A stretch of DNA of 64,000 nt from Mytilus edulis (GCF_963676685.1 NC_092348.1:86924001-86988000), one strand, 5' to 3'; counted from the stretch's first letter, positions 16,911-64,000 are shown. Notes: generated from the sequence alone by a model not told the origin. A program made the numbers and translations.

Positions 16911-18328
16911 CATTACTAGTAAAATATCACAAAGAATCCATTATCCTATTTATCTGTTATCTTACAATAGTATAATATACAAGGTTTTGTGTGACTTTAT
17001 AAATGATTTGATATGGTTTAATTTTTCTAATTTTGATATAATCTTTTCTAAAGGTTTGAACGCCTGGGTAGACTCGAGGTAGCTAACTCAGTGTGTCAAT
17101 GTTATCGTCCTGAATGTGCATTTTTAAATATTTGCCACTGGACATGTAGCATTAATAAATAAATCATAAAGTTCAGTTTACTGTTACGACATTTTGTATC
17201 TTTATGACACTATTACTCCTTACTATACATTTGTAGATTATTTTACATCATAACTATTTTAAGACCTTATATACAAGGTGATAATAAGGTATTACTAGTA
17301 AAATTTCATAAAGAATTCATTATCATATTTATCTATCCCGTTATCGTAATACGGATGATACAAAGTTCGATTAACATAGAAATACCAAGTCACAAATGAA
17401 CGCAAATAAATCTCTGATAAAAATATATGTGTATAAACAGCAGCACATGACGGTTAGTTTCTTTATTTTTCTTATTCTTTGTGCCTTTTTTTGGTTAAAT
17501 TCTATTCCGTAAAAAGAAATTGAACAACATAAAAGAAACTTAATTATCAAAGGTACCTTTGATAAAACACAGTCATTTATATTTTTTACACGTATCAGAT
17601 TTCTGTATTAAAGTGTTCATTAAACAGCAACTGGAATATGAATAGCAATGAAATACGAACACTAAAAAAACTAACAAAAAGAATTCATGTTTGTTGAGTT
17701 GTGGCAGGCAAAAAGTTTTATATATTCTTTGTTCAAAAGAATTATCAACATACACTTATTTTTAATATTTACTGTTGTGCAATCAAATAAATACTGAATT
17801 CTCATTTATTGTATAGATTAGATGCAAATAACACATTTATTCAATTTGCATATGTTCTTAATCATGCACAGATAATACATGTTAGATTTTCTGCTTTATT
17901 GTAACGAAATAACAGTCAACCTCAGAGTTTAAAAGAAAAAACCACGTTTAATAACATTTCTGCACAGCTTAATAGATTATAAAATCGTGCTATAATTACC
18001 ACACACAAAAAAAAAGTACATGAAAGGAATAGCAAAATTCATCTATAGACTGTCGACTGTATTTCATTAAATACGAAATACGAAATATTTTATTAAAGAA
18101 AGCTTAAATTATTTCTATATCTGTTGGCGCTAACAGAAGGTCGCCGAAGTTACCATAATGACAAAAAGAGAACTAGCCTATTCTGGACGGGTGTACACAA
18201 TTTTAATCTTGGTATCTATATGATGAGTTTACTATACGAAGGACACTATTTTACATTGAAATCATAAACACTTCTGATTGGTTTGATTTTGATTTTAGAT
18301 ATTATTTGATTTTTCAGAAACTCAAACA

Positions 18329-22842: not shown

Positions 22843-23305
22843 TTTTTATGCCCCACCTACGATAGTAGAGGCGCATTATGTTTTCTGGTTTGTGTCTCCG
22901 TTCGTTCGTCCGTCCGTCTGTGCGTCCGTTCGCTTCAAGTTAAAGTTTTTGGTCAAGGTAGTTTTTGAAGAAGTTGAAGTCCAATCAACTTGAAACTTAG
23001 TACACATGTTCCCCATGATATGATCTTTCTAATTTTAATGCCAAATTATAGTTTTGACCCCAATTTCGTGGTCCACTGAACATAGAAAATGATAGTGCGA
23101 AGTTCAGGTTAAAGTTTTTGGTCAAGGTAGTTTTTGATGAAGTTAAAGTTACATCCACTTGAAACTTAGTACACATTTTCCCTATGATATGATTTTTCTA
23201 ATTTTAATTCCAAATTAAAGGTTTAACCCCAATCTTCACGGTCCACTGAACATAGAAAATGATAGTGCGAGTGGGGCATCCGTGTACTGTGGACACATTC
23301 TTGTT
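22843..23305 (+). mobile_element. HINE-like element (tttttatgcccc...ggggcatccgtgtact), copy 1 of 4
   Basis: subTIRs atgcccc/ggggcat, gttc/gtcc microsatellite, two central repeats, 3' hairpin gtgtactgtggacac. Other copies at 37461-37917, 47779-48023 and 63892-64000 (truncated by the window). Confidence 0.85.
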
Positions 23306-44700: not shown

Positions 44701-47700
44701 AATTTTGTACTACCTCTCCCTTCACTTTAGGTCTTCCACAGAATTCAATTTGGCCCCATCTACTTGTATTTATATTGGCAACGTTCTCGAGTTGTGACTC
44801 TTTCAGATGAAACAGAAAGGTCATAATTTAGAACCAAAATATGAATATTAAATTTCTTCCCATAAAAGGTGTGGTTTGTAAAACAGCTGTATGTGTATTA
44901 AGAAAGTGTGACATACAATGTGTAGACCTAAATTAATAGTCTTTCAATTCGAAATATGATATTACTTAAAAAGTAACCATCAATGAATCAATCTAAACAA
45001 GAAAGTAGATATTCTCCTTGGACCCAGAATAAACAAATGTTGTATATTTCAGAGGAAGTACCAGATTTTTGTAAAGCCAATCCCACTGCAGTAATACCAA
45101 GCCTGACAAACTGTGCAGAGTTTTATAACTGTTCAGATGGAAACAAAGCCCATGAATGTCAATATCCAGATCTCTTCTCTAAGATATCTCATAAATGTGA
45201 AAATTTTACTGGTGTACAATGTAACAATAGGACAGAACCACAAGCTCCATGTAAGTATGAATTTTTAACATCTCAATTTGTATTAGGTCATATATTTTTG
45301 TAAATATTTTTCATTTTGAAATATTTTTACACAGCTTAATGCATGAATTTTCATACAGAAATACTGGCAACAGTGATCTTTCTGTAACCATGCAGGACTC
45401 ATGCTACCAAGTGACTGGGGTGAAGAAGTTTCTTTTCCTAATTTGGTTAAATGTATATATACATTGTTATACCAGGTAAAAGCATTGTTTCAATTTTGGA
45501 TATCATTTTGTTAAGTTTATATATCTTTATACAAATGAATGTCTTCAGCAGAATAGTTTCCTCATTGAAATTTTGTTGATAAAAGATAATTTCTTTTCAT
45601 ACAAAATACAATCCTGTACACTCATGAACACTTTTCATAAGATCCAAGACAGCAATTGATTATTCCATCAACATATTTGATAAATTAGTACCATATTTTA
45701 ACCACAGCTTTAAACATCCTTAGAAATATACCTGTAGTTACAATGATTACAGTAACAAAAAAGTATTATATTATATTTCCGAAACTTTAGTATTCTTATT
45801 GTATGAATTATAATGTTACATCTGAATATATATATGACTTCTCTTTTTTATTTTAGGTGAATATAATCAGAACTTGTGTAATGGTAAACCAGGCTGTATA
45901 TCATGCCCAAAACGATTGCCAAGTTGTGTTGGGAAACCTGACGGGAGTCAACCATTCCCTAGCAAACTGTGGATGGAGGACTATGTCAAATGTTATAAAA
46001 ATAGGACAATGTCAGTGGTCAAATGTCCTAAAGGACAATATTTCCATCCTAACGAACAGAAATGTAAAACTAAAGTAGATAAAGGTAAACCACTGTTAAT
46101 TTTGTATCCATATTTTGAATTATTGATGATGAAGAAGGGGTAAGGGGTATAAACTCATGAAACAAAATTCCTACACATTGAAAATCTAGAGGAAAAGAAC
46201 AGACTTTTTTACTGTCTTCAAGTCACAGTGACTTCAAAGCTAAATAGGTCCAGATGAACGGAGCACCAGAGTGAATGGAGTGATTCACTTGAAGTTGATA
46301 ATGATATATCAAGATGAACACAGATGAGGGATAATATCAACCAATTCAGGACAAGAATTTTACAAATACTTGTCATTATTTAAAAACAATATCATTTGTG
46401 ATATACAGATGAATATGGTGTGGGATTTTCTCACTTTGTTGAAGACCCATTGGCGGCCTTCAGCTGTGCTCTGCTCTATGGTATCTTTGACACATTCCCC
46501 ATTTTCAAACTTTATTTTATTCCTTTTACAAGGTTATCTGGAAAAACATAATTTCCAAAACCAAATTAAGGAACATTTATAAACTTTAAAATGTGATGGG
46601 CCTTAACAGAACTTAATTATCAAACCTAAGAAGTCAACTTTCCCTTCAAAGGATGTAAGTTTCTCTTTTCAGTGCACTCCACCTTTGTCCACCAATATCA
46701 AGAAATAGAGGCGGGTCTATTATTGAATTTTTAGAGTTGATATACATGTACAAGATTACTGTCAAACCATCAACTAATATTCTATCAGACAAAGTTCAAT
46801 CATGCTCACTACTTTATTCTTCCAGACCAAGAAAATTGAATGTTAAGAAGTCATCAACCTATCACATATATTCATTATATTTCAGTTGATGTACCAGATT
46901 ACTGTACAGCCCATCCCAGCGCCATTTTACCAGACCCAGATAATTGTGCTCACTACTTTAACTGCTCTGATCCCACAATGGCCACCATAACCAGAGGAGC
47001 AGGTCAGACTCCAGGAAATTACAGGAAGGAGTGTCACTATCCAGACTTATTTGATGACAGTATTAAACAATGTAATAAGTTTGAAATGGTCAACTGTGAC
47101 AAGAAACAAGAACCTCAAGCTCCTTGTAAGTTATTATTTTTTTTGACTTGTTTAGCTGGTCAATATAAATAATATGAAGTGAGGATGAAGATAAAACATT
47201 AGAAGTTTACCTTCATTTTTTAAATGAAGAAAACAATACGTGAGAAATTAAGTTTTATTGAGAATCAGATGCATGTTTGTAAAAAAAACCCTGAATAATG
47301 ATAAAGAAACTCATCTGGCCAGTGACAGAAACATCTTGAAATGGTTTAATTACTACAATACATAAAATTGGAAACAAGAAGAAATAAATGGTTGAATTAT
47401 TTGTCTGGATTTTGCATTCATATTTTATTTGATTTTAAGGTGAATACCAACAAAACTTATGTCAAGCTGTCAACAAAACCTGTGATCCTTGTACAAAGAG
47501 ACTTCCATCTTGTGTGGGGAAATCTGATGGATTAAATCCATTCCCTGCCAAGTTGTGGCAAGCAGATTATGTCAGATGTTATAAAAATAGAACAATGGCC
47601 GTCTCAAAATGTCCAACTGGAGAATACTTCAATCCTAGACTGGACAAATGTATGAAAGTTGTACAACCAGGTAAGTCATAATTTCTTCTGAAACAGGTCT

Positions 47701-50700
47701 TTTTAGGATATTTTGTAACCTATGTTTTTAAAACTCATGAATGAAAGTTTTGGAATGAGGTTAATCATATCTTCTGACTTTTTTATGTCCCACTGAGGGG
47801 CATTATGTTTTTTGGTCTGGTGTGTCTGTTCTTATGTCTATCAAGGTAGTTTTTGATAAAGCTGAAGTCCTATTAACTTGAAACTTAGTACACTTGTTCC
47901 CTATGCTATGATCTTTCTCATTTTAATGCCAAATTAAAGTTTTGACCACATTTTAATAGTCCACTCAACATAGAAAATGATACTGCGCATGGGGCATCCC
48001 TGTACTATGGACTTATTCTTGTTAATATATAGGTTTGCTTTGTATTACTTATATTATACAGCTATGACAATCTCAGATTGTTGTTAGGTTCACCTTTGTT
48101 CCTTATTTAGTTATCATACCATTTTATTGCGAGTTACGCCTTGAAGGCTATGGTTTTTACTATTCCAGTTGACATACCAGATTATTGTAAAGTCCACCCT
48201 ACAGCCATGATACCTGACCCTACAAACTGTGCCAAGTTCTACAACTGTTCACAGAACATGGCCACTAAAACAGCTGTAGCATCAGAGTGTAAATATCCTG
48301 ATCTATTCTCTGACGTTTCCCAGAAGTGTGAAAGATTCCAGAATGTGTCGTGTAAATCGAGGATGGAACCACAAGCTCCCTGTAAGTTTACAACTTTAGG
48401 TATAGGGATAAAGTCATTTCTTGTGTACTGTTCTTTAAAGTCAATTAAAGTGATGCAAATTATAATGTATTGTTGCATCATGTATTTTCATTCTTCTGAC
48501 AGATTTAAATTTACTGTATATAGATATAAGAAGATGTGGTATGGTTGCCAATGAGACAACTTTTCATTCAAGTCAAATTTATAAAAGTAAACCAGAATTG
48601 GTCAAAGTTAGGTCTTTTACACGGAGCCTTGGCTCACACTGAACAGCAAGCTACATGTATAAAGGACTTAAAAAATGACTTGTGTAAAACCATCCAAACA
48701 GGAAAAACAACTGTCTAATCTATATAAAAACGAGAATAAAAAAAAACATGTATGAACCTTATCAACAAACAACAACCAATAAACATGAGGTAATTTTCAT
48801 GAATAAGGCTGATTCCATCAATTTCTTTCCGTTCTTACAAACAAAGCTTTGTCAAACTGAATCCACATTTAAATGAAAGACATCATTATTAAAAATATCA
48901 TGTTTTTACACAGAAAACAAATTGTAAGGTTGTTTTGGTTTTGCAATGGCACTGTTCATATGGCATCTATGCTTCATGCCATAGTGTAAAACTTGCATTG
49001 ATTTGCACAAGGAAGAAAATTGTAAAAGAAGAAAAGTGTTATTTTAGTGAGAAAGTATTAAATCACTGCAGAGAAATTACAAAAAATATTTTATATGTAC
49101 TTGTCTTATAATGCAGATATATTATAATTATTTTATTCCTCAGGTGAATATGACCAAAACTTGTGTAAGCCAGGAGACATGAACTGTGAATTATGTCCTA
49201 AACGTTTACCGAGTTGTCGTGGACTACCTGATGGTGATGAAGCTGTCCAATCAGCTCTGTGGACAGATCTGTATGTCACATGTCTGATAAATAGGACCAT
49301 GGCTGTGCGTCACTGTCCTGTTGGTCAAGTGTTTGATCCCAGTCAGTTACACTGTGTCAGTAAAATACCAAAAGGTAAATTTGTAATTAATAGTTAAAAG
49401 TTTTGAATGTTCTCTTATTTTTTCCTCTTTTAACAATTACAAGCAAAATGTTCAAGATTTTCTGATAGCTTGTTAAAGTTGTCTCTGCAACCATACATTA
49501 TGGGATCTTAAGTGATCTGGTTAGAGAATTCTGGGAAAGATGTTACACGCATGATGTTGATGGATTTATAATATTGGTAATGATTACTTACCAAGCTAAG
49601 GTACTTTAAATTTCTCAGTTACTTATAAAAGAACAATTGCAAGCATGTGAATGATTGAAAAACAATTAAGCTTTCCTTTATGATTTTAAAATGTAGACAA
49701 AAAAAAGCATTGATGATAATTCTAGTGTGACATTTTTCTTTTAAAGAAAAATTAAAAATCCTATAATAGAATTTGTTTGGAACATTTTCCAGGAAATATT
49801 GATGCCTTCTGTCTGGCTAACCCCACATCTATAGTGCCACACCCAGACACATGTGGTCAGTACTACAACTGTTCAGCCATGTCCAAATATGGTCATCATC
49901 TCCAGGAATGTCAGTACCCAGATCTGTTTGATGATGTCAGTCTGACATGTAAAGACTTTGAACAAGTCAAGTGTAACAAATCAAAACATGAACCAGAGGC
50001 CCCATGTAAGTACTTTTATCCAGCACTGATGAATTTGATTGAAACATCAACTGATCTTCATAAAATGAAAACATTAATGAAAACATTATTTTGTGTTATT
50101 CTCCAAGTAGATTAATGTACTGTTCTTAATGCAGAAAAGAAAATAATGAAACTTTTTAGTCACATTTTAGTTTGTCGTTTTGTATATAAACAAATTAATG
50201 TATATGTTACTCTAATATTTTTTCTTACAGGTGAATATTTACAGAATAGATGTAATGCATCAGATCCAAGTTGTCTTCCATGTCCCAAACGTCTGCCTTC
50301 CTGTGTTGGACATCCAGATGGAGACAACTCATTCCCAAACAAACTATGGATGTCTGACTACATCACCTGTTATAAAAATAGAACATTGAATATAGCACAC
50401 TGTAGCCATGGTTACTTCAATCCAAGGACAGCCAAATGTGAAGATGATGTTCCTAAAGGTAATATTTAGGAATTAATTAAGGGAGAAGGAAAGCAAATCC
50501 ATATTTTATTATTTACAGAGTCTGTTACATAGTAAAATGTAATAAAACTTTTTTTAATTAAAAAAAACGTCAGAATGCTATTAATTTGGTATTATATATT
50601 AGTTAAAAGAAGCTATTTTAAATTTCCTGCCAAAAAAGGGCAGTTGATGTATTTTTATATATGTGACATCATTTCTTTTATTCTGGTTCCGCATTAATAT

Positions 50701-53700
50701 AAAAAAATGCTTACCAATTTAACAAGTTAAAAGAAAAAACCTTCAATTTCATAGAAACAGAGTTCTAGAGCTTTAAAACATTGTTATGATAACCTCTTGA
50801 ACTTTGTGCAAAACATAATCGTTACATTAATAAGCATGTAATCTTTGGATGTTTTTCAGTTGATCTGGTTTGTTCATCAGAACCAATTTATATTATAGTT
50901 GATTTTAATTTTGTTTTTCAGTTGATGTACCAGACTACTGTACAGCCCATCCCAGCGCTGTTCTAGCAGATCCAGATAACTGTGCTCACTACTTTAACTG
51001 CTCTGATCCCTCCATGGCCACCATAACCAGAGGAGCAGGTCAGACTCCAGGAAATTACAGGAAGGAGTGTCACTATCCAGACTTATTTGATGACAGTATT
51101 AAACAATGTAATAACTTTGAAATGGTCAACTGTAGTAAGAAACCAGAACCACAAGCTCCTTGTAAGTATGCTTGAATAGAAAAATAAATCTTGGCTCCCT
51201 TGCTTTCTGAACAGATATATCATGTTATGGAGGGGTAATTGCGAGAAATACTAGTCAAGGGACTAAAATTTCCCAAGCCACCAGGCGAGGAAAATTCGGT
51301 CCCAAGACTGGTATTTTTTCACAAATACTCCTCCATAACATGATATATCGGTTAAATTACACTGAGTAGGTTTGGATTTAAACTCTTGGTACAGGTGAAG
51401 ATAAATTTTATTTTTATTTGAAAGCTGTAATTCATTAACATGTTGATGCATAATTTTGAGGATAAGAGGATATTATCATAGAACCGCGGGAATTATGAAT
51501 GTACTTATAAGCTTAAGCTAGGTTTTTTTTAGGTTATGTCATATCCAAAAAAAATTTGGCGGGGAGATGCTCGAGAGTGTAAAAAAGGAATATTCAAAAT
51601 GCAAATTCACTGGCAGTGGTGAAAACAGGCAACTATTTTTAAAATGAGGAAAAATATTAGAATATGCAAAAAATACACTGGGTATCAACCAATCAAAATC
51701 TGGCTTTCTTATATAAGGTGTAATTATATTATAAATTCACCAATTCTGTTGGCCTTCATATCAATTTTTCAGTTCATATAAAGTGACAAAACATTACCTA
51801 ACCTTACTTGGCCTGAAAAATTTAACATAATTGTAATTGCATACAAGAGTCAACTGGTTCCCAGATGTTTGTTAGTACATAAACAGTAAAATATACCTAG
51901 CTTCAAGCTTTCATTTCAAACCAAAATTGGCATTGCATTTGGGTGAGTTCTGTGCAAAACATTTACACTCACTTATATGTTCTTCCCGGCTTGGCTTAAA
52001 TAAATGGTTCTATATCCATGAAACGAGCATAAGATAATTACCCCCGGAAAAATAATGAATCCACAGTTAGTTTATACATGTTAAGTCTCAACTTTCTATT
52101 AGCATTTCTGTCATCTCCTGACTTCAAAATTTACAGTACAATAGAAAAGAGTAGTGATGTTTGTAAGTGAGTGTTTTGAAATAAGATATTTAACATAAAG
52201 ACAAAAATCATGTGCAGTTGTTGTGGAACTATATCAAATTTCTTGGTTTTTCATTGTAATGTATTTATTTATTTCAGGTGACTATCAACAGAATTTGTGT
52301 CAAGCTGTCAACAAAACTTGTGATCCTTGTACAAAGAGACTTCCATCTTGTGTAGGGAAATCTGATGGGTTAAATCCCATTTCTGCCAAGATGTGGCAAG
52401 CAGATTATATGAGATGTTACAAAAATAGAACAATGGCGGTCACAACATGTCCAACTGGAGAATACTTCAACCCTAGACTGGATAAATGTATGAAAGTTGT
52501 ACAACCCGGTAGGTATTTCTCAGTAAAACATTAATTGAAATAATTATATTTTTGTGATCGGATTGCTTTCCTTAATAAATGTGGTAGGGCCACAATTAAA
52601 AATATTTCAGTTTGTCCAAACCCGACCCATGATGACTGGGTGTTGGTAGGTAGGTAGGCAAATTCTTTTTTTTTTTTTTTTTTATCAGAATTTGCATGAA
52701 AATATTAAAAGATTTTAAAACAGTATATCATGGCTTTTTTTTCCGTCAAACCTTTGTAGAGAAAACCAAAAGCCATGAATTTAAAACCTCTATAAATAAA
52801 TTAGTCTACTATATGATTTGTATCCTGAGATGTTTATAACACTGACAATTGCTAGCTGTGTGAAAGTGCTGGTGGATTTATGAAGTGATTTTCAACAGTT
52901 CCATCAACACGATGTTTGTGTAAAAAAAATATCAGCTGAGTATGTAATTATTAAATTTGTTTGCAGTTTTTAAATCCTATTTCTATTAAAATATTTATAT
53001 GAATTATTATCTATCATCCTTAGTTTGTGTCTTGTTTATGTTTTGAAAACAAATTTGTATTTACATTATCACACAGGTTAACTAATTTGGCTATAAATAG
53101 ATCAAAGCATGTTCTGTAGAATCTCCAAACTAAAAACGTATTTGTTATAATTTTATTTCTTTAAATAATCAAGTTTAAATTTTTGAAAATAATCATTATT
53201 GATAAAATATAATTGCATAAAGTTAACGTTTTCTGAAGACTATTTATTTTTAGGTCATGGTTCTAGAGGCTTCCTCACAAATTTGTATAAAAATCCAATA
53301 TGGCGTCCATAACATGTTTTTACTTTTGCACATGTGAAAAAAATATTTCTGTCAAAAGTCAGATTTCTCTTGTCAAAAGGGATTTATATTGCAATAAATT
53401 ATTCAGAGGGAGTTACATTCAGTTAAGATTATATTTCTGATTCTGTGAACAATTATAGTTTTATCAAATTCTCCCAAACAGCAACGTACTGATCTTGTCT
53501 AATGAGACTTGTAAATTTGAACTATTTGAATAAAAGGGCATCTAATTTACATGATAAAGAAAGATTATAATTAAAGACAACAATTTATCAAGAAATAATT
53601 CCTTTTTATTCAGTAAAAACAAAATCTTCTTGCAAGATTGTAAATTCGCAACTTCCGGATCCATTTCCTGTCAGAATAACATTGAAAATATTCGATTGCA

Positions 53701-56700
53701 CATGGTTTTGAACAAATCTACCTGAATATTCTTATCAGATATTCGATAACACGATGAAATTAACATTGAGCATATAGGTAAGGGTTTGGTAGTACAGACA
53801 ACTACAGCGTAAAAAAAACTGTGCCACTTCACATGTTTTACTTCTTTACGTTCGTTAAATCAGAAGATAAAAACAGAGAACATCGAATCGATTAACTGCG
53901 TCTTTTATACGCTTTCTTTTAATCTTATTCACAGTTACTTTAAAACGCAAAGACGACAAACATTAAGTTTTGTACGATGACGGAGCGGACCCAAAAAAAA
54001 TCTGAAAAAAAAAAAATTCTTCAAAAAAACGTCAAAAAAAGAATTTGAGTCGGCGGGTTTATTTTGGGTCGGTCGCGTTTGGGCAAACATACAATCTTTT
54101 TATTTTGGCCTAGTCTACTAGATCCTTGGTCGAGCTTAGGAAGTACTCTTATTTTTAGCTCAGTCAGTATAAATGCTGCTTTGTAATACATAGGTTCCTG
54201 TTTCTAGCCCATGGGGAGAAATAAGAAATAAGTGATTTTGCAATAGAATCATGCTATCCTGTCCTGTTACATTTGTAATTAAGATAAAGTGTTGAAAATT
54301 GAATGGCTAAAGTTCAAAACCTACCCTGAGATTCAAACAAGTATTGATATGTTTCTCTTTATAAGCGCTTATGTCTGTATCCCTCTTTCTGTCTCCAATG
54401 ATAGTTAAATAAGAGTTGAAAGTTTCAATGAAGTGTGAAGCTAAGGACTTATCTATTTGTGATACATGTTCCATTTATTTGTATGAATCCATTGTAATGC
54501 TCAAGGCTTAAATATTTGTAAATCTAAAACAAACTATATAGATTGAAGAGTTTTTAAAACAAAGAGAACCTTTCATGAAAAGTCATTGATTTTTGGTATA
54601 ACAGAGTTTCTTTGTTATTGTCTGATGACTATGCATGTATTGCATGTTAAATTTGTGAATAGGTCAGTATGGCCAATTTACCAAGCTCAGGCAATAGTGC
54701 TCTCTGTAACACTTCTTGGTTATCTTTCAGTTGACATACCAGATTATTGTACAGCCCATCCCAGCGCTGTTCTTCCAGACCCAGATAATTGTGCTCACTA
54801 CTTTAATTGCTCTGATCCCACAACAGCCACCATAACCAGAGGAGCAGGTCAGACTCCAGGAAATTACAGGAAGGAGTGTCACTATCCAGACTTATTTGAT
54901 GACAGTATTAAACTATGTAATAAGTTTGAAATGGTCAACTGTAGTAAGAAACCAGAACCACAAGCTCCTTGTAAGTATATGATGAAAAACATTAGTAATA
55001 TAAAAAATGATTAATTAATAAATTTCTTTAAAAAAAAATTACATTATTACATGTGTATTGTATGGGACACTTCTAACTTATTTGAGAAAAAGAAAAATAA
55101 CTTTTGACATGATTTGTTAAATATTGATATGAGGAGGTGTGGTATGAATGCCAATAAGACTACTATTCTACTAAGACTAAATGATATGCATGTAAATGCC
55201 TGTAGTGCTTTCAACAAAGAGCAAATCCGATACTGTATAGTCGATTACAAAAGGACCCCTCTAAGACAAAATGTGAAACAAGAAACCAATGTCCAGATTT
55301 ATAAAAAAAACAATATGATAGCAACCAACGACTTGGACAGAATTACAGGCTCCTGATCATACTGATGATCCCTGTTAAAAACATATTCTCATGACTCATC
55401 ACGGTCATGTCTTGTAATAATTTTATACAATTTAGTTTTAGCAACATATTTTGAAATATTTAGACTTCCTGTTAGTAACAGTAAACAATGGCCATATTAA
55501 TCTTGTTTGGATTTATTGCCTATTTAATTACACAATTTTGAAATATCGCTACATTGACAACAACACGTGGGATACTCTATATCATTATGTAATGTTGAAC
55601 AGAAAATGAATCAAACATAGTGCAATGCAAATGAAGTTACTAAATTTAGAGTTAATCTATAATTTTTCGAATTGTCTTTAACTTTAAAATGGTTGTAAAC
55701 TATTATAATGGTAAGTGTATAAATAAAATGTGTTTTTAAATAGAAATTAAATTTGTGTAACATGTATGTAAGTACAATGTCAGTGTACAGTTTTATAAAG
55801 TTTCTTCCTAATTTGGACAACACTAATAGGGCACACCCCTACCACTTCGACTGGGTTCCCTTTGGCCGGAGGTACTACTTCCAATCGCGTCGGGAATGCC
55901 GTAAAGTGGTTTACTGTCGCAGAATTTCTTGGCAATGTTGGTTGAACTGGAAATGGTGGTGGGAAGGATTTATGTTCTTTGTATCTTACTTCTTTTAACT
56001 TTAATTTGCTGCAGGTTTAAAATAGTACTGGAAATCTATCTTGGCTGTTTTGTGTCATCTCCATTGACTTTTGAAAGATCCTTTTTAAGGTTTCACACTA
56101 AAATAATTTTACATTTAATTTTCTGATGGCACAGAATGATGGTACATATAAATCTTGATATATTGGCCGTCCTGTTGTAGAAATGTAGTCCTCTGTTTGT
56201 TCTTCATATAAGTTTCCTTTTGTTTGGTGGTTTCTTGGCAGTAATTGATGGTATCAGTTGTTTGTTGGCTTCTTGGAATTCTTCGTTCTTGCTCGGTATA
56301 GAGATGGCCGTGGGGTCGGCGCTGTGTGGTATAGGCGGATCCGGGGATGCAGGGGTTCAGATGGAATATCAAAAGATAAATAAAGAGCTGCTGAACCAAC
56401 GCCTCTTATGTTTTGTGCTGGTAGAGTTCCCTTAAGTGGATATCTGGATATCTGGTATCCACTTAAGGGAACTCTACCAGCACAAAACATAAGAGGCGTT
56501 GGTTCAGCAGCTCTTTATTTAAATTTTGAAATATATATAACAATTTAAAACAAAAATATAAATAAGAAAAATCTGGAAGTGCTGATGTATAATTTTTGTT
56601 ATCACTGTTTGAATAAAATATATTGCACTAGAAATATGAAAAGGAAAAAAATATAAAAGTGTCCTTACAAATTCAAGTAAAAGGTACACAGAAGCTATGA

Positions 56701-59700
56701 ATGATGATAAATGTATGTTAAAACAATATCTTTTTTTAAATGAATGTAAGCAGCAATATAGTGAGGTTATGAACTATTTATTTCAGGTGAATATCAACAG
56801 AATTTGTGTCAAGCTGTCAACAAAACTTGTGATCCTTGTACAAAGAGACTGCCATCTTGTGTGGGGAAATCAGATGGATTAAATTCCTTCCCTGCCAAGA
56901 TGTGGCAAGCAGATTATATGAGATGTTACAAAAATAGAACAATGGCGGTCACAACATGTCCAACCGGAGAATACTTCAATCCTAGACTGGACAAATGTAT
57001 GAAAGTTGTACAACCAGGTCAGTTATTATTCTTTTGATTTTTTTTCAAAAAGCTCAGTCCATATATATTTCATATTGTAGAGTTTAAATATGTTGTTTCT
57101 GACTGCAGTGAAAGTCTACAAACTGTGCCACACTAAATATATAATATCCGTTGTCTCTTTTTCAGTTGACATACCAGATTATTGTATAGTCCACCCAACA
57201 GCCGTAATACCCGACCCTACAAACTGTGCCAAGTTTTACAACTGTTTACAGAACTTGGGCACTAAAACAGCTGTTGTATTTGAGTGTAAATATCCTGACT
57301 TATTCTCTGACGTTTCCCAGAGCTGTGAAAGATTCCAGAATGTGTTGTGTAAAACCAGGAAGGAACCACAAGCACCTTGTAAGTATTGAAGTTAATAAGA
57401 TAAAATCAGAGTTCTTTGAGGATAATTTTTTTATGTATATTTTCAATTTGATGTGTTTGATATCTGCCTCATAAGGACATCTAAAAAAAAAATTACATAT
57501 ACATTGCTTGTGATTGCTGAGGCATGTTTTTATTGTGATCCACAGATTGTGGGTTACTCAACATTTTTGTGATGTAAGGTTAAAATGATATCCATAGAAG
57601 GAAATTTTGAAATTTATATTTGTTGCTATGACAAAATTTAAAGGAGGTAATTAATAGACTAAATACTTTAAATAATATAATGTGTAGATGTATGTCAATG
57701 AGAAAGCAACCAAACAATGCAAAAATAAAAAAATGATGTATAGAGGTCAATAAACAGTCATATAACATTAAACAATAGACATGTGTCTAAACAATATGTT
57801 AAAGCAGTAAATCTTCCAGAGTTTAGAATAGATGTGAATAAATTTATAACCAAGGTTAAATACTTTATTCTTCAGGTGAATATGACCAGAACTTATGTAA
57901 GCCAGGAGACATGAACTGTGAAGTATGTCCTAAACGTTTACCCAGTTGTCGTGGACTACCTGATGGTGACGAAGCTGTCCAATCAGCTCTCTGGACAGAT
58001 CTGTATGTCACATGTCTGATTAATAGGACCATGGCTGTCCGTCATTGTCCTGTTGGTCAAGTGTATGATCCTACTCAGTTACACTGTGTCAGTAAAATAC
58101 CTAAAGGTTAGTTACTACCTTGTGTTTTACAAGTATTGTATAGATGTTGCAAAAAGTGGTGGTTCTGAAGGTTTTGACCACCAACATTTTACAAAGGACC
58201 AACATGCTTTAATATTTTTCAATAGAAATAATTTGAAGACCAGCAGATTTTCTATATAATTCCACCTTGTGTGATATTGCTGTATTTTGATTGGATGAGG
58301 CATGATATTTTTTACCATTTTCTACTGGTATGTATTAAGATTTTCTTTTCTTTGCCAGTGTATTTGTCATTAGAGAATTCCATCTGCCTGGGTATTTGCA
58401 AGCATCCTATTAAAATTCAGGCGAATAACATTAAAATTTGTATTGCACTTATAAAATGTAGTGGATTGTAATATATATGGCAATAGCATTTATCTGAATA
58501 TGTCCTAAAACAAAAGGTTCTTGTGAGTTTAAGTTTTATTGTATTTTTTCTAGGAAATATCGATGCCTTCTGTCTGGCTAACCCCACATCTATAGTGCCA
58601 CACCCAGACACTTGTGGTCAGTACTACAACTGTTCAGCCATGTCCAAATATGGTCATCATCTCCAGGAATGTCAGTACCCAGATCTGTTTGATGATGTCA
58701 GTCTGACATGTAAAGACTTTGAACAAGTCAATTGTAACAAATCAAAACATGAACCAGAGGCCCCATGTAAGTACTTTAACATAGTCAATAAACTATATCT
58801 TTAAATTCAAGAGATAGAGATTCATTAGCATTTATGCTTTCTTAAATGTCCAGAATTAAGATCCAACAAATCCTTAGAATCATTATGCCATTAACCATTC
58901 AAATTTATGCCTAATTTTTCTATGGCAAAATGCAGTGTTGAATTGAATGAATGAATGAATTCTTTATTTGCCAAGCAGTAATTACATACTATTGCAACAC
59001 AAACATATTTACATTGTGACACACAATAAACAACACAGAACAATATTATAAGATATTGCAATAGACAAATAATCAACAACTACCAATTATATGTGATCTA
59101 ATCTGCCTTGCAGATTTCGAATAATTACACAATTTTCCAACTAAAGATCTAGAGTTTGAAACTAAAAGAAACACAGAGATTTGATTGATGTTTCATTAAA
59201 TATTTCTGAACACAAAAGATCTACAAAAAATACTAGAATACCAAACTGAAAGATCTGTTTAAAACAAAAAGGTGTTTAAAAGGAAAGACTTTTAGATCAA
59301 TAAACATTTAATCTTTAATGGCATAAGGTGATTTCATGTTTACATCTTTACATATTTAATAATGCATGTCTAAATGTGCTGCAAATTTTATATTTAAAGA
59401 CAAATTTTGTTTTCACAGGTGAATATTTACAGAACAGATGTAATGCATCAGATACTAGTTGTCTCCCCTGTCCTAAACGTCTGCCATCTTGTGTGGGACA
59501 TCCTGATGGAGACAACTCATTCCCCAACAAACTATGGATGTCTGACTACATCACTTGTTATAAAAATAGAACATTGAATGTGACACAGTGTAGCCATGGT
59601 TACTTCAATCCAAGGACAGTCAAATGTGAAGATGCTGTTCCTAAAGGTAACAGATAACCACTAATCATTGTGTTTACTGAACAGGTTTCAACCATTACAA

Positions 59701-62700
59701 ATAAATTTTAGTAACAAATCAGCTAAGGAACCATGCGGTAGAGGGGATCAGCAAGGAACAAGTCACTGTAAAATATTAATACACAATTTAATGCAATGTT
59801 TCTGTACATCATTTATATGTAGAAAAGACCAAGAAACAACTAAAATTAAAGTCTTTAAGATTCATTCTGAGTACGAACTATGATTTTTATCCAAGACTTA
59901 TTTTTCTAGACTTGCAAGTATTTTAAATAAAAGGGACAAACATTTGATATTTTGATTGTTAAAAAGCGGATGATATTAGAATTCATAATGCCAACCAGCC
60001 ACTAAATAGTATTAGAAAGGCAAAAACCATTTTGTACCCTGACCATTTCGTACATTGACCATTTCGAAGCTCATGGAATATTAACATGTAATACCATTTT
60101 GTACCTCATTGAAGATTAATATGTATGCCATTTTGTACCCCCATGGAAGATTAATATGAATGCCATTTCGTACCTCATGGAAGATTTATATGTAATACTA
60201 TTTCGTACCTCATGGAAGATTTATATGTAATACTATTTCGTACCTCATGGAAGATTTATATGTAATACTATTTCGTACCTCATGGAAGATTTATATGTAA
60301 TACTATTTCGTACCTCATGGAAGATTTATATGTAATACTATTTCGTACCTCATGGAAGATTTATATGTAATACTATTTCGTACCTCATGGAAGATTTATA
60401 TGTTTGCCATTTCGTACTTCATGGAAGATTAATATGTATGCCATTTCGTACCTGATGGAAGATTTATATGTAATACCATTTCAAACATCATGGAAGATTA
60501 ATATGTATGAAATTTCCTACCTCATCGAAGATTGATATGTAATACCATTTCGTACCTCATGGAAGATTACTATGTAGGCTTTTTGTACCTCATGGAAGAT
60601 TATTATGCATGGCATTTCATTTTTATGTGTAACATGTCTTGGTTTATCATACAAGGAAAGTCAAGGCACTTTGCACATATCTCTATTCATAATGTCATTA
60701 CTGAGAATCAGGATTGTACACAAGGCGTCCATAGAGATGTTAAAGGCGGCTTACACAAATATCAACATCAACGTACTTCTGCCGGTGGTCAAATGTTGCT
60801 TTCCGTGTTGTACGAGCCTGCTTTTTTTGCATCTTCTTCAGTTTACCCTCTGATACCAAAAAAAACCTTTAAAAACATGAAAAACTGTACAAAAATATGA
60901 TAGGAAATGGCTTACATGTATTAAGTCCATGAGGTATGATGCATTTGGCCCATTGGGTACAAAATGGATATTATCGTGGGTACAAAATGGTAAATGTTAG
61001 GTACGAAATCACAGATTTGGGTATGAAATGGCAGAGGTACGAAATGGTCAGGAAACGAAATGACTTGCTTTCTTAGAATGGACACAAGAGGAATATGATG
61101 TGACATCATAATCAATGAGCCAGCCTGTTTAATAACATGTTTGATTTAATAATAACTTGACATGTTTAATAAGCTTTAAAAAGAGGTCTGCATGCATAGT
61201 TCTTTAAGATAAGATTTAGGAAAGAATATTTGTTACTGCTTGATCAATTTATTTAAATTTTCCCATCCCCATTCCATTTTATAAAACGCAGATAATTGTG
61301 CTTCCTGCAATGTTTTAATTTTGTTTTGCAGTTGATGTACCAGACTACTGTACAGCCCATCCCAGCGCCGTTCTACCAGACCCAGATAATTGTGCTCACT
61401 ACTTTAACTGCTCTGATCCCACCATGGCGACCATAAACAGAGGAGCAGGTCAGACTCCAGGAAATTACAGGAAGGAGTGTCACTATCCAGACTTATTTGA
61501 TGACAGTATTAAACAATGTAATAACTTTGAAATGGTCAACTGTAGTAAGAAACCTGAACCACAGGCTCCTTGTAAGTATTTGAAAAACATGTGATGAAAA
61601 AAAAATAATGTCTTTAATTTTCTAGGTGGACAGATACTATTAGTTGCTTCTTCCTTACCCCTAGCTAATAAAGGCAGTATAACTTTGTATGTAAGTACCA
61701 TATTTTACAAGGATTTGATTTAAAGAATGAAGATAGAAAAAGAAAGAGTATTAGGTTTTTGAATTGCATATGTTTTTAGCTCACCTGGCCCAGAGGGCCA
61801 AGTTAGCTTTTCTCATCACTTGGCGTCCGGCGTCCGGCGTCCGTCGTCGTCCGTCGTCGTCGTCCGTCGTCGTCCTGCGTCCGGCGTTAACTTTTACAAA
61901 AATCTTCTCCTCTGAAACTACTAGGCCAAATTTAACCAAACTTGGCCACAATCATCATTGGGGTATCTAGTTTAAAAATTGTGTCCGGTGACCCCGCCAA
62001 CTAACCAAGATGGCCGCCATGGCTATAAATAGAACATAGGGGTAAAATGCAGTTTTTGGCTTATAACTCAAAAACCAAAGCATTTAGGGGAAATCTGACA
62101 TGGGGTAATATTGTTAATCAGGTTAAGATCTATCTGCCCTGAAATTTTCAGATGAATCTGACATTCCCTGGTTAGGTTGCTGCCCCTGAATTGGTAATTT
62201 TAAGGAAATTTTGTTGTTTTTGGTTATTATCTTGAATATTATTTTAGATAGAGATAAACTGTAAAAAGCAATAATGTTCAGCAAAGTAAGATCTACAAAT
62301 AAGTCAACATGACCAAAATGATCAGTTGACCACTTTAGGAGTTATTGCCCTTTATAGTCAATTTTTAACCATTTTTCGTAAATCTTAGTAATCTTTTAGA
62401 AAAATCTTCTCCTCTGAACCTGCTGGGCCAAATTATTTGAAACTTGGCCACAATCATCATTGGGGTATCTAGTTTAAAAATTGTGTCCGGTGACCCCGCC
62501 AACTAACCAAGATGACCGCCATGGCTATAAATAGAACATAGGGGTAAAATGCAGTTTTTGGCTTATAACTCAAAAACCAAAGCATTTAGAGCAAATCTGA
62601 CATGGGTAAAATTGTTAATCAGGTGAAGATCTATCTGCCCTGAAATTTTCAGATGAATTGGACAACTTGTTTTTGGGTTGCGGCCCCTGAATTGGTAATT

Positions 62701-63807
62701 TTAAGGAAATTTTGCTGTTTTTGGTTATTATATTGAATATTATTATAGATATAGGTAAACTGTAAACAGCAATAATGTTCAGCAAGGTCAGATTTACAAA
62801 TAAGTCAACATGACCAAAATGGTCAGTTGACCTCTTTAGGAGTTATTGCCCTTTAAAGTCAATTTTTAACCATTTTTCGTAAATTTTATATATCTTTTAC
62901 TAAAATCTTCTTCTCTGAAACTGCTGTGCCAAATTGATCCAAACTTGGCCACAATCATCTTTGGGGTTTCTTGTTTAAAAAATGTGTCCGGTGACCTGGC
63001 CATCAAACCAAGATGGCCGCCACGGCTAAAAATAGAACATAGGGGTAAAATGCAGTTTTTGGCTTATAACTCAAAAACCAAATAATTTAGAGAAAATCTG
63101 ACATGAAGTAAAATTGTTAATCAGGTCAAGATCTATCTGCCCTGAAATTTTCAGATGAATTGGACAACCTGTTTTTGGGTTGTGGCCCCTGAATTGGTAA
63201 TTTTAAGGAAATTTTGCTGTTTTTGGTTATTATATTGAATATTATTATAGATTTAGGTAAACTGTAAACAGCAATAATGTTCAGCAAAGTAAGATCTACA
63301 AATAAGTCAACATGAACGAAATGGTCAATTGACCCCTGTAGGAGTTATTGACCTTTGTAGTCAATTTTCAATCTGCTTCCTTTGTTTAATATTCACATAG
63401 ACCAAGGTGAGCGACACAGGCTCTTTAGAGCCTCTAGTTTTTTAAAGAAAACAATAGATAAATGTTCTAAAAAAAAAACCAAACACATTCAGTAAAGTTA
63501 ATTGTAAAAATTTGTTGCATAGTGGCAGTTCTTATAATTATATTATTGTATAACAACAAAATGCACATTATTTTAGGTGACTATCAACAGAATTTGTGTC
63601 AAGCAATCAACAAAACCTGTGAGCCTTGTACAAAGAGACTTCCATCTTGTGTAGGAAAATCAGATGGATTAAATCCTTTCCTGGCCAAGATGTGGCAAGC
63701 AGACTATGTCAGATGTTATATCAATAGAACAATGGCCGTCACAAAATGTCTAACTGGAGAATACTTCAACCCTAGACTGGATAAATGTATGAAAGTTGTA
63801 CAACCCG
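29714..63807 (+). CDS. Very large secreted protein: signal peptide, FCGBP/IgGFc-binding N-domain, acidic DNDCDGxIDEE motifs, TSP1, at least 22 chitin-binding type-2-like domains (3'-incomplete)
   Basis: 27 phase-compatible coding exons (6616 nt, about 2205 aa): 29714-29774 (MIDVRKLLAVICILSLSFGQ), 30958-32234, 32653-32752, 33312-33362, 33809-33985, 34335-34550, 34953-35174, 36231-36428, 36681-36914, 45053-45250, 45857-46084, 46886-47125, 47440-47670, 48169-48381, 49144-49374, 49793-50005, 50231-50458, 50922-51161, 52278-52508, 54731-54970, 56787-57017, 57166-57378, 57876-58106, 58554-58766, 59419-59646, 61332-61571, 63577-63807. No in-frame stop was seen, and the last exon ends at a donor. Confidence 0.88.
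30735..30957. repeat. 29-bp minisatellite (atttacattttgataaatttaatgtaata), about 8 copies, ending in the splice acceptor
   Basis: The last partial unit reads ttacattttgataaatAG|GTCCTCCT, so it supplies the acceptor of exon 30958. Confidence 0.92.
30958..32234 (+). CDS. Exon encoding the FCGBP N-terminal (IgGFc_binding) domain
   Basis: Hallmark motifs: DNIGREFVVSFMEN, PTDALGNEY, DLTGAHIEATHPVSAYSGN, DHLVEQLTPVDTWGKKF, DPSMMIIPP, YLYGHAYHESYAFPTG. Confidence 0.9.
32653..33362 (+). CDS. Two small exons with acidic putative metal-binding motifs (GDGLDNDCDGKIDEELC and DDDGDGRIDEDC)
   Basis: Exons 32653-32752 and 33312-33362 are joined by a GC-AG intron. The motif resembles the Pfam Cu-binding_MopE (putative metal-binding) repeat consensus DGxDNDCDGxxDE. 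Confidence 0.8.
33809..33985 (+). CDS. Thrombospondin type-1 repeat exon (absent from the ORF track)
   Basis: VDGLWGSWGPWSGSCSVTCSKGVLFRNRSCDDPAPLYNGKNCIGSDQDTKPC has WxxWxxW, CSVTC and RxRxC. 177 nt, phase 1-1. Confidence 0.93.
34335..46084 (+). CDS. Three divergent two-exon chitin-binding modules
   Basis: X exons have six Cys in peritrophin-A spacing (C-x13-C-x5-C-xn-C-x12-C-x7-C) and end EPQAP. Y exons begin CEYxQN and contain RLPSC...C[YF]KNRT. An 8.1-kb intron (36915-45052) separates modules 2 and 3. Confidence 0.85.
35163..35920 (+). repeat. About 31-bp minisatellite built from an exon/intron junction (about 24 copies)
   Basis: Alternating units aatgaatacaggtatggaaaacgtgtagatc and aatgaatacaggtatgccagacgtgtaaac. 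The first copy is the authentic exon end AATGAATGCAG|gtatga at 35174/35175. Confidence 0.92.
37035..37225 (+). mobile_element. Degenerate tRNA-derived SINE (RUDI/V-SINE-like)
   Basis: B-box-like gagtttgaacc, then ...ggtaatccggcttcctc...aaaactgaacgctgtgatatagcc...gttgaaagtggtg, which resembles the V-domain and tail of bivalve SINEs as I recall them. Confidence 0.5.
38748..40043. mobile_element. Non-autonomous TIR element with 7-bp TSD (P-superfamily-like)
   Basis: TSD gaacacg at 38741-38747 and 40044-40050. Left TIR cagagacatataat; right TIR attatatgtctg (2-nt deletion). Confidence 0.75.
40067..40856. mobile_element. Non-autonomous TIR element with 7-bp TSD (P-superfamily-like) and internal ggaactttt...actagtt repeats
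   Basis: TSD cagaacc at 40060-40066 and 40857-40863; perfect 13-bp TIR cagagacatatat/atatatgtctctg. Confidence 0.88.
40898..41477. mobile_element. MITE, Kolobok-like termini
   Basis: Left aggagtaggtccggtaagga and right tcttactgaacctactcct; flanks tcaa / ttga are TTAA-like. Confidence 0.7.
42005..42662. mobile_element. Foldback-type MITE with ~150-bp imperfect TIRs
   Basis: aggttgggaacaaaccctctatatggtgattatacctgtatagag...ggggcagaatggcatt is mirrored by aatgccattctgccc...ctctatacaggtataatcaccatacagggggtttattcccaacct. Confidence 0.85.
42850..43284. mobile_element. Hairpin-ended non-autonomous element (possibly Crypton-like)
   Basis: 138-bp near-perfect palindrome at 42850-42987 with a GGCGAAGCC apex, followed by a module bounded by atttatcctgattt / aaatcaggataaat with a CCAATCA box near its end. 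Superfamily assignment is a guess. Confidence 0.6.
43455..44257. mobile_element. PIF/Harbinger-like MITE
   Basis: tta|gaccctgttcacactag ... ctagtgtgaacggggtg|tta: 3-bp TTA TSD and Harbinger-type TIR. Confidence 0.85.
46886..52508 (+). CDS. Chitin-binding super-repeat block 1 (exons A1 B1 C1 D1 E1 F1 A2 B2)
   Basis: Exon lengths 240, 231, 213, 231, 213, 228, 240, 231; all phase 1-1. Confidence 0.88.
51214..51724. mobile_element. Second hairpin-ended element (same architecture as 42850-43284, different sequence)
   Basis: Imperfect palindrome at 51214-51349 (gatatatcatgttatggagg...cctccataacatgatatatc), then a module bounded by aattacac / gtgtaatt with aaccaatcaaaat near its end. Confidence 0.6.
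52588..54110. mobile_element. Non-autonomous TIR element with GGCC termini and 3-bp TSD (Zator/Harbinger-like)
   Basis: tag|ggccacaattaaaaatattt...gtttgtccaaacccgaccca ... gggtcggtcgcgtttgggcaaac...tttttattttggcc|tag. Confidence 0.75.
54731..63807 (+). CDS. Chitin-binding super-repeat block 2 (exons A3 B3 C2 D2 E2 F2 A4 B4)
   Basis: Same exon-length series as block 1, with near-identical exon sequences. Confidence 0.88.
56377..56521. repeat. Perfect palindrome, 66-bp arms and 13-nt loop
   Basis: 56377-56442 is the exact reverse complement of 56456-56521; loop tctggatatctgg. Confidence 0.95.
60015..61072. mobile_element. TIR element with an internal 35-bp minisatellite
   Basis: tta|gaaaggcaa...ttgctttc|tta. 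Subterminal motif ccatttcgtacc on the left and ggtacgaaatgg on the right. The unit tttcgtacctcatggaagatttatatgtaatacta repeats about 15 times over 60060-60605. Confidence 0.75.
61773..63440 (+). mobile_element. HINE/DINE-like element with three ~502-bp internal repeats
   Basis: tttttagctcacct subTIR, cgtc microsatellite, repeats starting aaaatcttctcctctgaa at about 61899, 62401 and 62903, 3' aggtgagc subTIR and hairpin aggctctttagagcct. Confidence 0.88.
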
Positions 63808-64000
63808 GTAAGTGTTTTTCTGTATATATCAATTTGTTCAATCAGCAACTTATGAAATCAGGTTGACAAAATTCTACCAAACATGTACAGATTTTTATGC
63901 CCCATTAATGGGCATTATGTTTTTTGGTCTGTGCGTCCATTTGTCCATTTGTTTGTCTGTCAGTTCTTTCATCCGTCCATTCATTAGTCCGTCAATCATT

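What the first reader, a model, noticed from the sequence alone, without database searches (positions are those of the whole stretch)
46886..63807. Exon-only homogenisation: paralogous exons 94-99% identical while the introns between them do not align
Seen: E1 (49793-50005) and E2 (58554-58766) differ at 3 of 213 nt (2 synonymous). D1 and D2 differ at 13 of 231 nt (10 synonymous). A core of about 75 nt (agaggagcaggtcagactcc...gacagtattaaac) is identical in all four A exons. The corresponding introns (e.g. D1-E1 418 nt vs D2-E2 447 nt; E1-F1 225 vs E2-F2 652) share by eye only 10-20 nt at splice sites and carry different transposons. Established: purifying selection on protein does not keep synonymous sites near-identical. 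Inference: an old duplication is being repeatedly homogenised by conversion tracts confined to exons, either DNA-DNA conversion limited by intron divergence or conversion templated by spliced RNA/cDNA. The uneven synonymous divergence between neighbouring exons D and E fits this.
Basis: partly seen in the sequence, partly recalled or inferred. Interest (0 to 1): 0.85.

Follow-up and report, generated by a model that had tools for sequence, protein, structure and literature searches.

The report
Exon-only homogenisation in mollusc chitin-binding gene
In a giant bivalve gene made of about 83 chitin-binding-domain exons, a block of 22 exons has stayed 83-99% identical while the introns between them have diverged beyond recognition, which is a clean new example of the known process of gene conversion confined to coding sequence.

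Summary
In-window paralogous exons are 89.2-98.6% identical, not 94-99%, and similarity ends within about 10-30 nt of the splice sites. Same-position introns score no better against each other than unrelated introns do.

The exons are phase 1-1 CBM14 (peritrophin-A) domain exons of one roughly 90-kb, 83-exon gene. The near-identical block is an 8-exon unit (A B C D E F A B) present about three times. The third copy lies just beyond the window.

dS between copies ranges from 0.05 (E) to 0.82 (F2-F3) in neighbouring exons (heterogeneity p = 1e-6). GC3 is close to intron GC. In the same genome, TE copies at 74-84% identity and 95-99% segmental duplicates align through non-coding DNA. The last ~30 nt of upstream introns still keep a positional genealogy that the exon sequences contradict.

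Best reading: an old genomic duplication whose exons are homogenised one at a time by short ectopic conversion, with the diverged introns acting as barriers. A cDNA donor cannot be excluded. ORF fragments from another taxon cluster by source, but only at protein level.

Read data and orthologous DNA could not be obtained. This is a new member of a known kind and of moderate interest.

The parts
46886..47125 (+). Exon A1 (240 nt, phase 1-1, CBM14 domain), first A of unit 1
   Evidence: AG/GT borders and open frame. Pfam PF01607 at 25.7 bits. 93-94% identical to A2-A5.
47440..47670 (+). Exon B1 (231 nt, CBM14)
   Evidence: 90-95% identical to B2-B5.
48169..48381 (+). Exon C1 (213 nt, CBM14)
   Evidence: 89% identical to C2 and C3.
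49144..49374 (+). Exon D1 (231 nt, CBM14-like, just under the Pfam cut-off)
   Evidence: 94-95% identical to D2 and D3.
49793..50005 (+). Exon E1 (213 nt, CBM14), the most homogenised family
   Evidence: 3 differences from E2 and 2 from E3; dS 0.05.
50231..50458 (+). Exon F1 (228 nt, CBM14-like)
   Evidence: 92% identical to F2 and 85% to F3.
50922..51161 (+). Exon A2, second A of unit 1
   Evidence: Its upstream intron flank groups with A4 (17 of 26 matches).
52278..52508 (+). Exon B2, second B of unit 1
   Evidence: Its core (exon positions 132-169) shares states with the neighbouring B3.
54731..54970 (+). Exon A3, first A of unit 2; its first ~20 nt carry C-type states
   Evidence: sites 5, 6, 17. 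Its upstream flank groups with A1 and A5.
56787..57017 (+). Exon B3
57166..57378 (+). Exon C2
57876..58106 (+). Exon D2
   Evidence: 97.4% identical to D3 (dS 0.09).
58554..58766 (+). Exon E2
59419..59646 (+). Exon F2
   Evidence: dS to F3 is 0.82.
61332..61571 (+). Exon A4, second A of unit 2
63577..63807 (+). Exon B4, second B of unit 2. Unit 3 (A5 B5 C3 D3 E3 F3) follows beyond the window, at L031:622-6498.
47126..63576 (+). The 15 introns between these exons (148-2222 nt). They are not alignable between units and are filled with different TEs and tandem repeats. Only the last ~30 nt before each exon keep a positional signal.

Best explanation
An 8-exon genomic unit (A B C D E F A B) of a giant CBM14-repeat gene was duplicated to about three copies, introns included. 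This happened long enough ago for the introns to be saturated by substitutions, indels and TE insertions. Since then the paralogous exons, each about 213-240 nt, have been homogenised one exon at a time and at different times by short non-allelic (intragenic) DNA-DNA gene conversion. Heteroduplex can form only where homology survives, that is in the exons, so the diverged introns act as tract barriers and uncouple neighbouring exons. Purifying selection on the domains (dN/dS 0.07-0.29) keeps exons similar enough to remain conversion partners. Shown: the exon/intron contrast, the heterogeneity of dS, and the conflict between flank and exon genealogies. Inferred: that conversion is the homogenising process, and that the donor is genomic DNA.
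For: 1. Exons are 83-99% identical, and similarity ends within about 10 nt downstream and about 30 nt upstream of the splice sites.
2. Same-position introns are no more alike than unrelated introns.
3. In the same genome, neutral DNA at 16-26% divergence (TE copies) and at 1-5% divergence (C10 duplicates) aligns end to end. Intron turnover therefore cannot explain unalignable introns beside exons with dS 0.05-0.4.
4. dS differs up to 16-fold between adjacent exons for the same pair of units: E 0.05, D 0.09, F 0.82 for unit 2 versus unit 3 (chi-square p = 1e-6; p = 1.6e-4 for unit 1 versus unit 3).
5. GC3 (0.35) is close to intron GC (0.31), so there is no codon bias that could hold synonymous sites.
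6. The upstream intron flanks keep the positional groups {A1,A3,A5} and {A2,A4} (15-17 of 26 matches, against 9-13 for other A pairs and a background of 10.4). Exon A distances ignore position: they average 15.5 differences within groups and 14.5 between groups, and A3-A5 is the most different pair.
7. 52-62% of informative site pairs in A and B are incompatible. B has two well-supported conflicting splits, with ends {B2,B4} and core {B2,B3}, and B2 and B3 are physical neighbours.
8. There is a sharp gap in identity: 83-99% inside the block and at most 74% for any other exon pair of the gene. This is as expected for an identity-dependent conversion domain.
9. ORF fragments of another taxon carry E-type and A-type exons in several flank contexts. 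These share 5 (E) or many (A, including a 1-aa indel) states that are absent from all copies here.
Against: Formal tract tests are weak. The PHI-like test gives p = 0.13 (B) and 0.97 (A), and the best GENECONV-like run (B2-B3) has p = 0.015 before correction for 10 pairs. There is no significant GC3 excess of the kind biased conversion would give (p = 0.058). Synonymous differences are not enriched at exon edges (28/27/27), although homology-limited DNA-DNA tracts should convert edges less often. Most exon pairs still have dS 0.2-0.4, so 'homogenised' rests on the introns being much older. The cross-taxon evidence is protein-only, and independent amplification in each lineage would give the same clustering. 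In the other taxon the A-type copies share their intron flanks, which suggests recent duplication occurs there. The assembly could not be checked with reads.
Confidence: 0.6

Rival explanations
1. The homogenisation is confined to exons in the same way, but the donor is spliced RNA or cDNA of this gene rather than genomic DNA. This is the explanation proposed for fungal ribosomal-protein paralogs.
For: dS is far below intron divergence, which is the criterion used in PMC6993855. E1/E3 are 99% identical up to the acceptor site, while the adjoining 46 nt of intron are only 76% identical. Synonymous differences show no edge effect.
Against: None of the ~83 exons is fused, so there is no intron loss, which is the usual by-product of cDNA recombination. 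Neighbouring exons have independent histories. A tract confined to one exon is equally expected with a DNA donor. Germline expression is unknown.
Confidence: 0.15
2. There was no conversion. A burst of duplications occurred at about dS 0.2-0.8, the introns were replaced by unusually fast indel and TE turnover, and exon E (and D) evolve slowly because of stronger constraint.
For: Most dS values are 0.2-0.4 and the A copies are roughly equidistant, i.e. star-like. E is also the exon most conserved between taxa, at 91-93% aa against about 80-85% for A, B and F. Intron lengths differ up to 7-fold and the introns carry TEs. Lineage-specific near-identical units also exist in the Sinanodonta homolog, with 435 of 441 aa identical between units.
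Against: TE copies 16-26% diverged still align over their full length in this genome. 1-5% diverged duplicates align through all non-coding DNA. Yet the introns beside exons that are 1-3% diverged show nothing. GC3 is close to intron GC, which argues against synonymous constraint. dS heterogeneity has p = 1e-6. Flank and exon genealogies conflict.
Confidence: 0.15
3. The pattern is an assembly or polishing artefact, in which multi-mapping short reads or RNA reads homogenised the exon sequences.
For: Reads could not be examined. The 77-nt invariant core lies in the centre of the A exons, where short reads would multi-map.
Against: Every copy keeps private differences. E identity runs right up to the intron borders, where reads are anchored. 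Other families show no central depletion. Each exon is embedded in unique intron sequence. No collapsed or alternative copy of the locus exists elsewhere in the assembly.
Confidence: 0.04

Closest known systems
Coding-sequence-only concerted evolution of duplicated ribosomal-protein genes in fungi (Mol Biol Evol 2019, PMC6993855)
   Same: Synonymous divergence is far below intron divergence. Homogenisation stops at the coding sequence, while introns and flanks diverge. The pattern is interpreted as gene conversion.
   Different: Those are dispersed two-copy genes with one intron, are highly expressed, and a cDNA donor is favoured. Here there are 22 tandem exons inside one gene, 3-5 copies per exon type, each exon has its own history, and the donor type is unresolved.
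[quoted passage not shown]
   Same: [quoted passage not shown] The phenomenon is rare and lineage-specific, and is tested with PHI on short alignments of low power.
   Different: That survey worked on coding sequences only and did not contrast exons with introns. Here each domain is one exon and the introns give an internal clock.
Long-lasting gene conversion between mammalian gene pairs (PMC2720389)
   Same: It involves non-allelic conversion with regional boundaries and patchy divergence along the duplicates.
   Different: In those pairs the tracts span exons and introns alike and raise GC content. Here the introns are excluded and GC3 is not clearly raised.
Ordinary recent segmental duplication (internal control: C10:52.25-52.81 Mb of the same genome)
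   Same: These are tandem copies carrying CBM14-like exons.
   Different: In the control, exons and non-coding DNA are uniformly 95-99% identical over 10 kb. In the finding only the exons are similar.

Membership tests
Concerted evolution by non-allelic gene conversion | [quoted passage not shown] | tested here: inconclusive
   The test was at protein level only. E-type and A-type exon ORFs of another taxon, in several intron contexts (three A-type ORFs each list a 317,758-bp contig as their longest, apparently the same one), share states absent from all copies here. Positional orthology could not be established and no DNA was obtainable.
Concerted evolution by non-allelic gene conversion | Divergence is heterogeneous along the duplicated region, with sharp boundaries | tested here: met
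   dS ranges from 0.05 to 0.82 between adjacent exons (p = 1e-6). Identity drops to background within 10-30 nt of the splice sites.
Concerted evolution by non-allelic gene conversion | Statistically significant tracts or mosaicism (GENECONV, PHI) | tested here: inconclusive
   52-62% of informative site pairs are incompatible and B shows two conflicting splits. However, the PHI-like test gives p = 0.13 and 0.97, and the best run has p = 0.015 uncorrected.
Concerted evolution by non-allelic gene conversion | Raised GC at silent sites (biased conversion) | tested here: not met
   GC3 is 0.353 in the block against 0.331 in the other 61 exons (p = 0.058). This feature is common but not obligatory.
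cDNA/RNA-templated gene conversion | dS is much lower than intron divergence, and tracts end at exon borders | tested here: met
cDNA/RNA-templated gene conversion | Intron loss or fused exons as by-products | tested here: not met
   All ~83 exon hits are single-domain sized (66-240 nt aligned; nearly all 186-240 nt) and are separated by introns.
cDNA/RNA-templated gene conversion | Transcription in the germline | not testable with these tools
Recent segmental/tandem duplication | Exons and introns are similar to the same degree | tested here: not met
   contrast with the control.
CBM14 / peritrophin-A chitin-binding domain (PF01607) | Match above the Pfam gathering score, one six-cysteine domain per exon | tested here: met
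   A, B, C and E score 25.7-31.4 bits against a cut-off of 22.1. D (21.0) and F (17.3) fall just below the cut-off but are homologous to B.

The most novel reading that the evidence does not exclude
Exon-by-exon homogenisation is templated by the gene's own spliced transcript (RNA- or cDNA-templated repair in the germline). The mRNA carries 3-5 near-identical copies of each exon type, so repair picks a paralogous exon as template. That would explain why identity stops exactly at splice sites and why exon edges are converted as well as centres.
Probability: 0.15. Interest if true: 0.8.

Novelty: new member of a known kind. Interest (0 to 1): 0.45.

Why it matters
The locus is an unusually clean natural experiment. 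It has 22 domain-sized exons in 3-5 copies each, separated by introns that have lost all homology, so every exon records its own conversion history. With orthologous loci and population data it could give tract lengths and the minimum homology needed for ectopic conversion. It could also give a direct test of genomic versus cDNA donors in an animal. It further warns that exon-based dating of duplications in repeat-domain genes can be far too young.

Tried and rejected
Blocked or blank steps:
- Two metagenome scans, with E1 and with P0151, found nothing.

Tests that gave no support:
- The PHI-like and run-length tract tests were not significant.
- There was no GC3 excess and no edge effect.
- Rooted triplets with an older exon as outgroup resolved only F, as (F1,F2),F3.
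- No single other exon explains F3's private states, so F3 is simply the least homogenised copy.

Readings considered and rejected:
- Intron gain after a cDNA-borne duplication. All introns sit at the same phase-1 domain borders as in the 61 older exons.
- Codon-usage constraint. GC3 is close to intron GC.
- Conversion from other loci. No other locus exceeds 74% identity.

Every search was done exon by exon, by reference.

Full report
WHAT IS THERE

The window is G000:C5:86924001-86988000 of a 1.37-Gb assembly with 14 chromosome-sized contigs. The nearest named homologs are 'chitin-binding type-2 domain-containing proteins' of the bivalves Sinanodonta woodiana and Tegillarca granosa and of the limpet Lottia gigantea. 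The organism is therefore a mollusc, most likely a bivalve.

The finding lies in one very long + strand gene. A tblastn of the six exon peptides against 144 kb (the window plus fetched downstream DNA) finds 83 exon-sized hits between window position 34.3 kb and extended coordinate ~125 kb. In the 22-exon block every exon has AG/GT borders, is flanked by phase-1 introns and has a length divisible by three. Each encodes one CBM14/peritrophin-A domain. Pfam PF01607 scores lie above the cut-off for A, B, C and E and just below it for D and F. Two exon types alternate along the gene.

THE REPEAT ARCHITECTURE

Self-BLAST, an own-genome search and BLAST on the extended sequence show a block of 22 exons in three units:
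- Unit 1: A1 B1 C1 D1 E1 F1 A2 B2
- Unit 2: A3 B3 C2 D2 E2 F2 A4 B4
- Unit 3: A5 B5 C3 D3 E3 F3

Unit 3 starts 622 nt beyond the window end (L031:622-6498). Inside the block, same-family exons are 83-99% identical. Every other exon pair of the gene is at most 74% identical, so the block is a discrete class and not the top of a continuum. No other locus in the genome matches these exons closely.

CHECK OF THE OBSERVATION

- E1/E2 differ at 3 of 213 nt, 2 of them synonymous.
- D1/D2 differ at 13 of 231 nt, 10 of them synonymous.
- The invariant core of A1-A4 is 77 nt.
- The intron lengths are as stated.

The title's '94-99%' is generous. In-window identities are 89.2-98.6%. By Nei-Gojobori, dS is 0.14-0.26 (A), 0.23-0.43 (B), 0.28 (C), 0.24 (D), 0.05 (E) and 0.31 (F). 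With unit 3 included, the extremes are 0.05 (all E pairs), 0.09 (D2-D3) and 0.82 (F2-F3). dN/dS is 0.07-0.29 in the window.

Similarity ends at the splice sites. Averaged over within-family pairs, flank identity is at background by +11 downstream and by about -31 upstream. With the exons masked, a permissive BLAST of 46-71 kb against itself finds only intron-internal tandem arrays, shared TE pieces and one 46-nt, 76% match directly upstream of E1 and E3. Local alignment scores of same-position introns are indistinguishable from those of unrelated intron pairs (p = 0.42 and 0.79).

CONTROLS FROM THE SAME GENOME

A TE in intron A2-B2 has dozens of copies, about 520 bp long, that align over their full length at 74-84% identity. 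Four CBM14-bearing segmental duplicates on C10 align over 10 kb, non-coding DNA included, at 95-99%. Neutral DNA of this genome therefore remains alignable at divergences equal to or larger than the exon dS values. The introns must be much older than the exons look.

EVIDENCE ON MECHANISM

1. Heterogeneity of dS. For the same pair of units, synonymous differences per site vary from 2/42 (E) to 23/46 (F). The chi-square p is 1e-6 for units 2-3, 1.6e-4 for units 1-3 and 0.12 for units 1-2. One duplication followed by clock-like decay cannot give this.

2. No synonymous constraint. GC3 of the block (0.35) is close to intron GC (0.31) and to the GC3 of the 61 older exons (0.33).

3. A relic of the true history survives in the introns.
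   - In the last 26 scored bases before the acceptor, positional homologs match at a mean of about 13.8 of 26. Non-positional pairs of the same family match at about 11.1 (both means computed from the table). Pairs from different families match at 10.4.
   - In family A the two classes separate completely. {A1,A3,A5} and {A2,A4} score 15-17, and all other A pairs score 9-13.
   - This shows that the units were copied as genomic DNA with their introns.
   - The A exons ignore these groups, with a mean of 15.5 differences within groups and 14.5 between groups. A3 and A5 have the most similar flanks but are the most different exon pair.

4. Reticulation. 52% (A) and 62% (B) of informative site pairs are incompatible. 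In B the exon ends support {B2,B4}|{B1,B3,B5}, which is the positional split. The core (positions 132-169) supports {B2,B3}, which are physical neighbours. Spatial tests are underpowered: the PHI-like test gives p = 0.13, and the best run test gives p = 0.015 uncorrected.

5. Other taxa.
   - Exon-sized ORFs from metagenome and run assemblies carry E-type exons in at least three different intron contexts. All have P4, Q7, H40, E47 and N54, where all three copies here have A, L, Q, D and D. Their best matches in this genome are E1-E3, and the next best match is at most 58%.
   - A-type ORFs, three of which each list a 317,758-bp contig as their longest (apparently the same contig), share many substitutions and a one-residue indel against all five A copies here.
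   - The copies therefore cluster by source, as concerted evolution predicts. Independent amplification in each lineage would do the same. In that taxon the A copies share their intron flanks, which hints at recent duplication there.
   - The Sinanodonta homolog has three 441-aa six-domain units that are 98.6% identical.

WHICH DONOR

A genomic donor with homology-limited tracts is the default. It explains why neighbouring exons are uncoupled and why no intron has been lost among the ~83 exons.

Two observations fit a spliced cDNA donor at least as well. Synonymous differences are not enriched at exon edges. In E1/E3, identity steps from 99% in the exon to 76% in the adjoining intron, right at the acceptor. 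The published precedent for exon-only homogenisation, the fungal ribosomal-protein paralogs, was read as cDNA-templated on the criterion dS << intron divergence (PMC6993855). That criterion alone does not discriminate once introns have lost homology. I put DNA-DNA at 0.60, cDNA at 0.15, no conversion at 0.15 and artefact at about 0.04.

COMPARISON WITH WHAT IS KNOWN

Concerted evolution of metazoan domain repeats is documented but rare (PMC5100051). Long-lasting conversion between mammalian paralogs spans introns and raises GC (PMC2720389). Coding-only homogenisation is known for dispersed duplicates. The present case combines these: intragenic, multi-copy, exon-by-exon homogenisation with fully decayed introns. 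It is a new member of a known kind and not a new mechanism.

LIMITS

All searches were done exon by exon, by reference.
- Splicing of the 22 exons into one mRNA is inferred from intact frames, canonical borders, uniform phase and dN/dS < 0.3.

Noticed in passing
window 51205-51735 (intron A2-B2): A ~530-bp repeat element has an internal 39-nt inverted repeat (51210-51248 / 51315-51353). Dozens of copies lie on nearly all large contigs at 74-84% identity. It looks like a non-autonomous TE family.
   Followed up: partly
window 54731-54750 (5' end of exon A3): The first ~20 nt of A3 carry the states of the C-type exons (exon sites 5, 6, 17) and not those of the other A exons. This could be a short conversion between exon families or the breakpoint relic proposed in note s1-832581. 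A5, at the same unit position, lacks the feature.
   Followed up: partly
window 47780-48054 and 63892-64000 (continuing to L031:245): The same repeat family sits 85-110 nt downstream of both B1 and B4, in introns that are not positional homologs. The match is 90% over 40 nt, then 74% over 214 nt. Other copies at 22873-23326 and 37481-37935 are closer to the B1 copy (84-88%), so independent insertions seem likely.
   Followed up: partly
window 60058-60601; 61886-63371; L031:1073-3060: Large intron-specific repeat arrays are present: a 35-bp unit x15.7 in intron F2-A4, a ~500-bp direct repeat (about three copies, 89-92% identical) in A4-B4, and a ~2-kb array with self-matches at offsets from about 62 bp in A5-B5. 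They account for much of the intron length differences.
   Followed up: partly
window 34300-46100 and extended coordinates 70.7-125 kb (L031, L032, L057-L062): The gene has about 83 CBM14 exons over ~90 kb. Older copies of the same A B C D E F order can be recognised downstream (for example at 71951-77684) at only 50-68% aa identity. The unit has therefore been duplicated in at least two eras.
   Followed up: partly
G000:C3:98.588-98.608 Mb (- strand) and G000:C10:52.09-52.94 Mb: There is a second CBM14 exon array on C3, at 35-46% aa identity. On C10 there is a cluster of at least four ~10-kb segmental duplicates, 95-99% identical, each carrying a CBM14-like ORF.
   Followed up: partly
P0001 (Sinanodonta woodiana KAL3884668.1): This homolog consists of three 441-aa six-domain units that are 435 of 441 aa identical. 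Near-identical multi-domain units therefore recur in this family in a distant bivalve. Its introns could not be examined.
   Followed up: partly
window 10215-10699, 10977-11687, 14596-15457, 16199-16913, 35148-35919: Several long tandem arrays lie upstream of and within the start of the gene region. Their copies are 75-96% identical.
   Followed up: no
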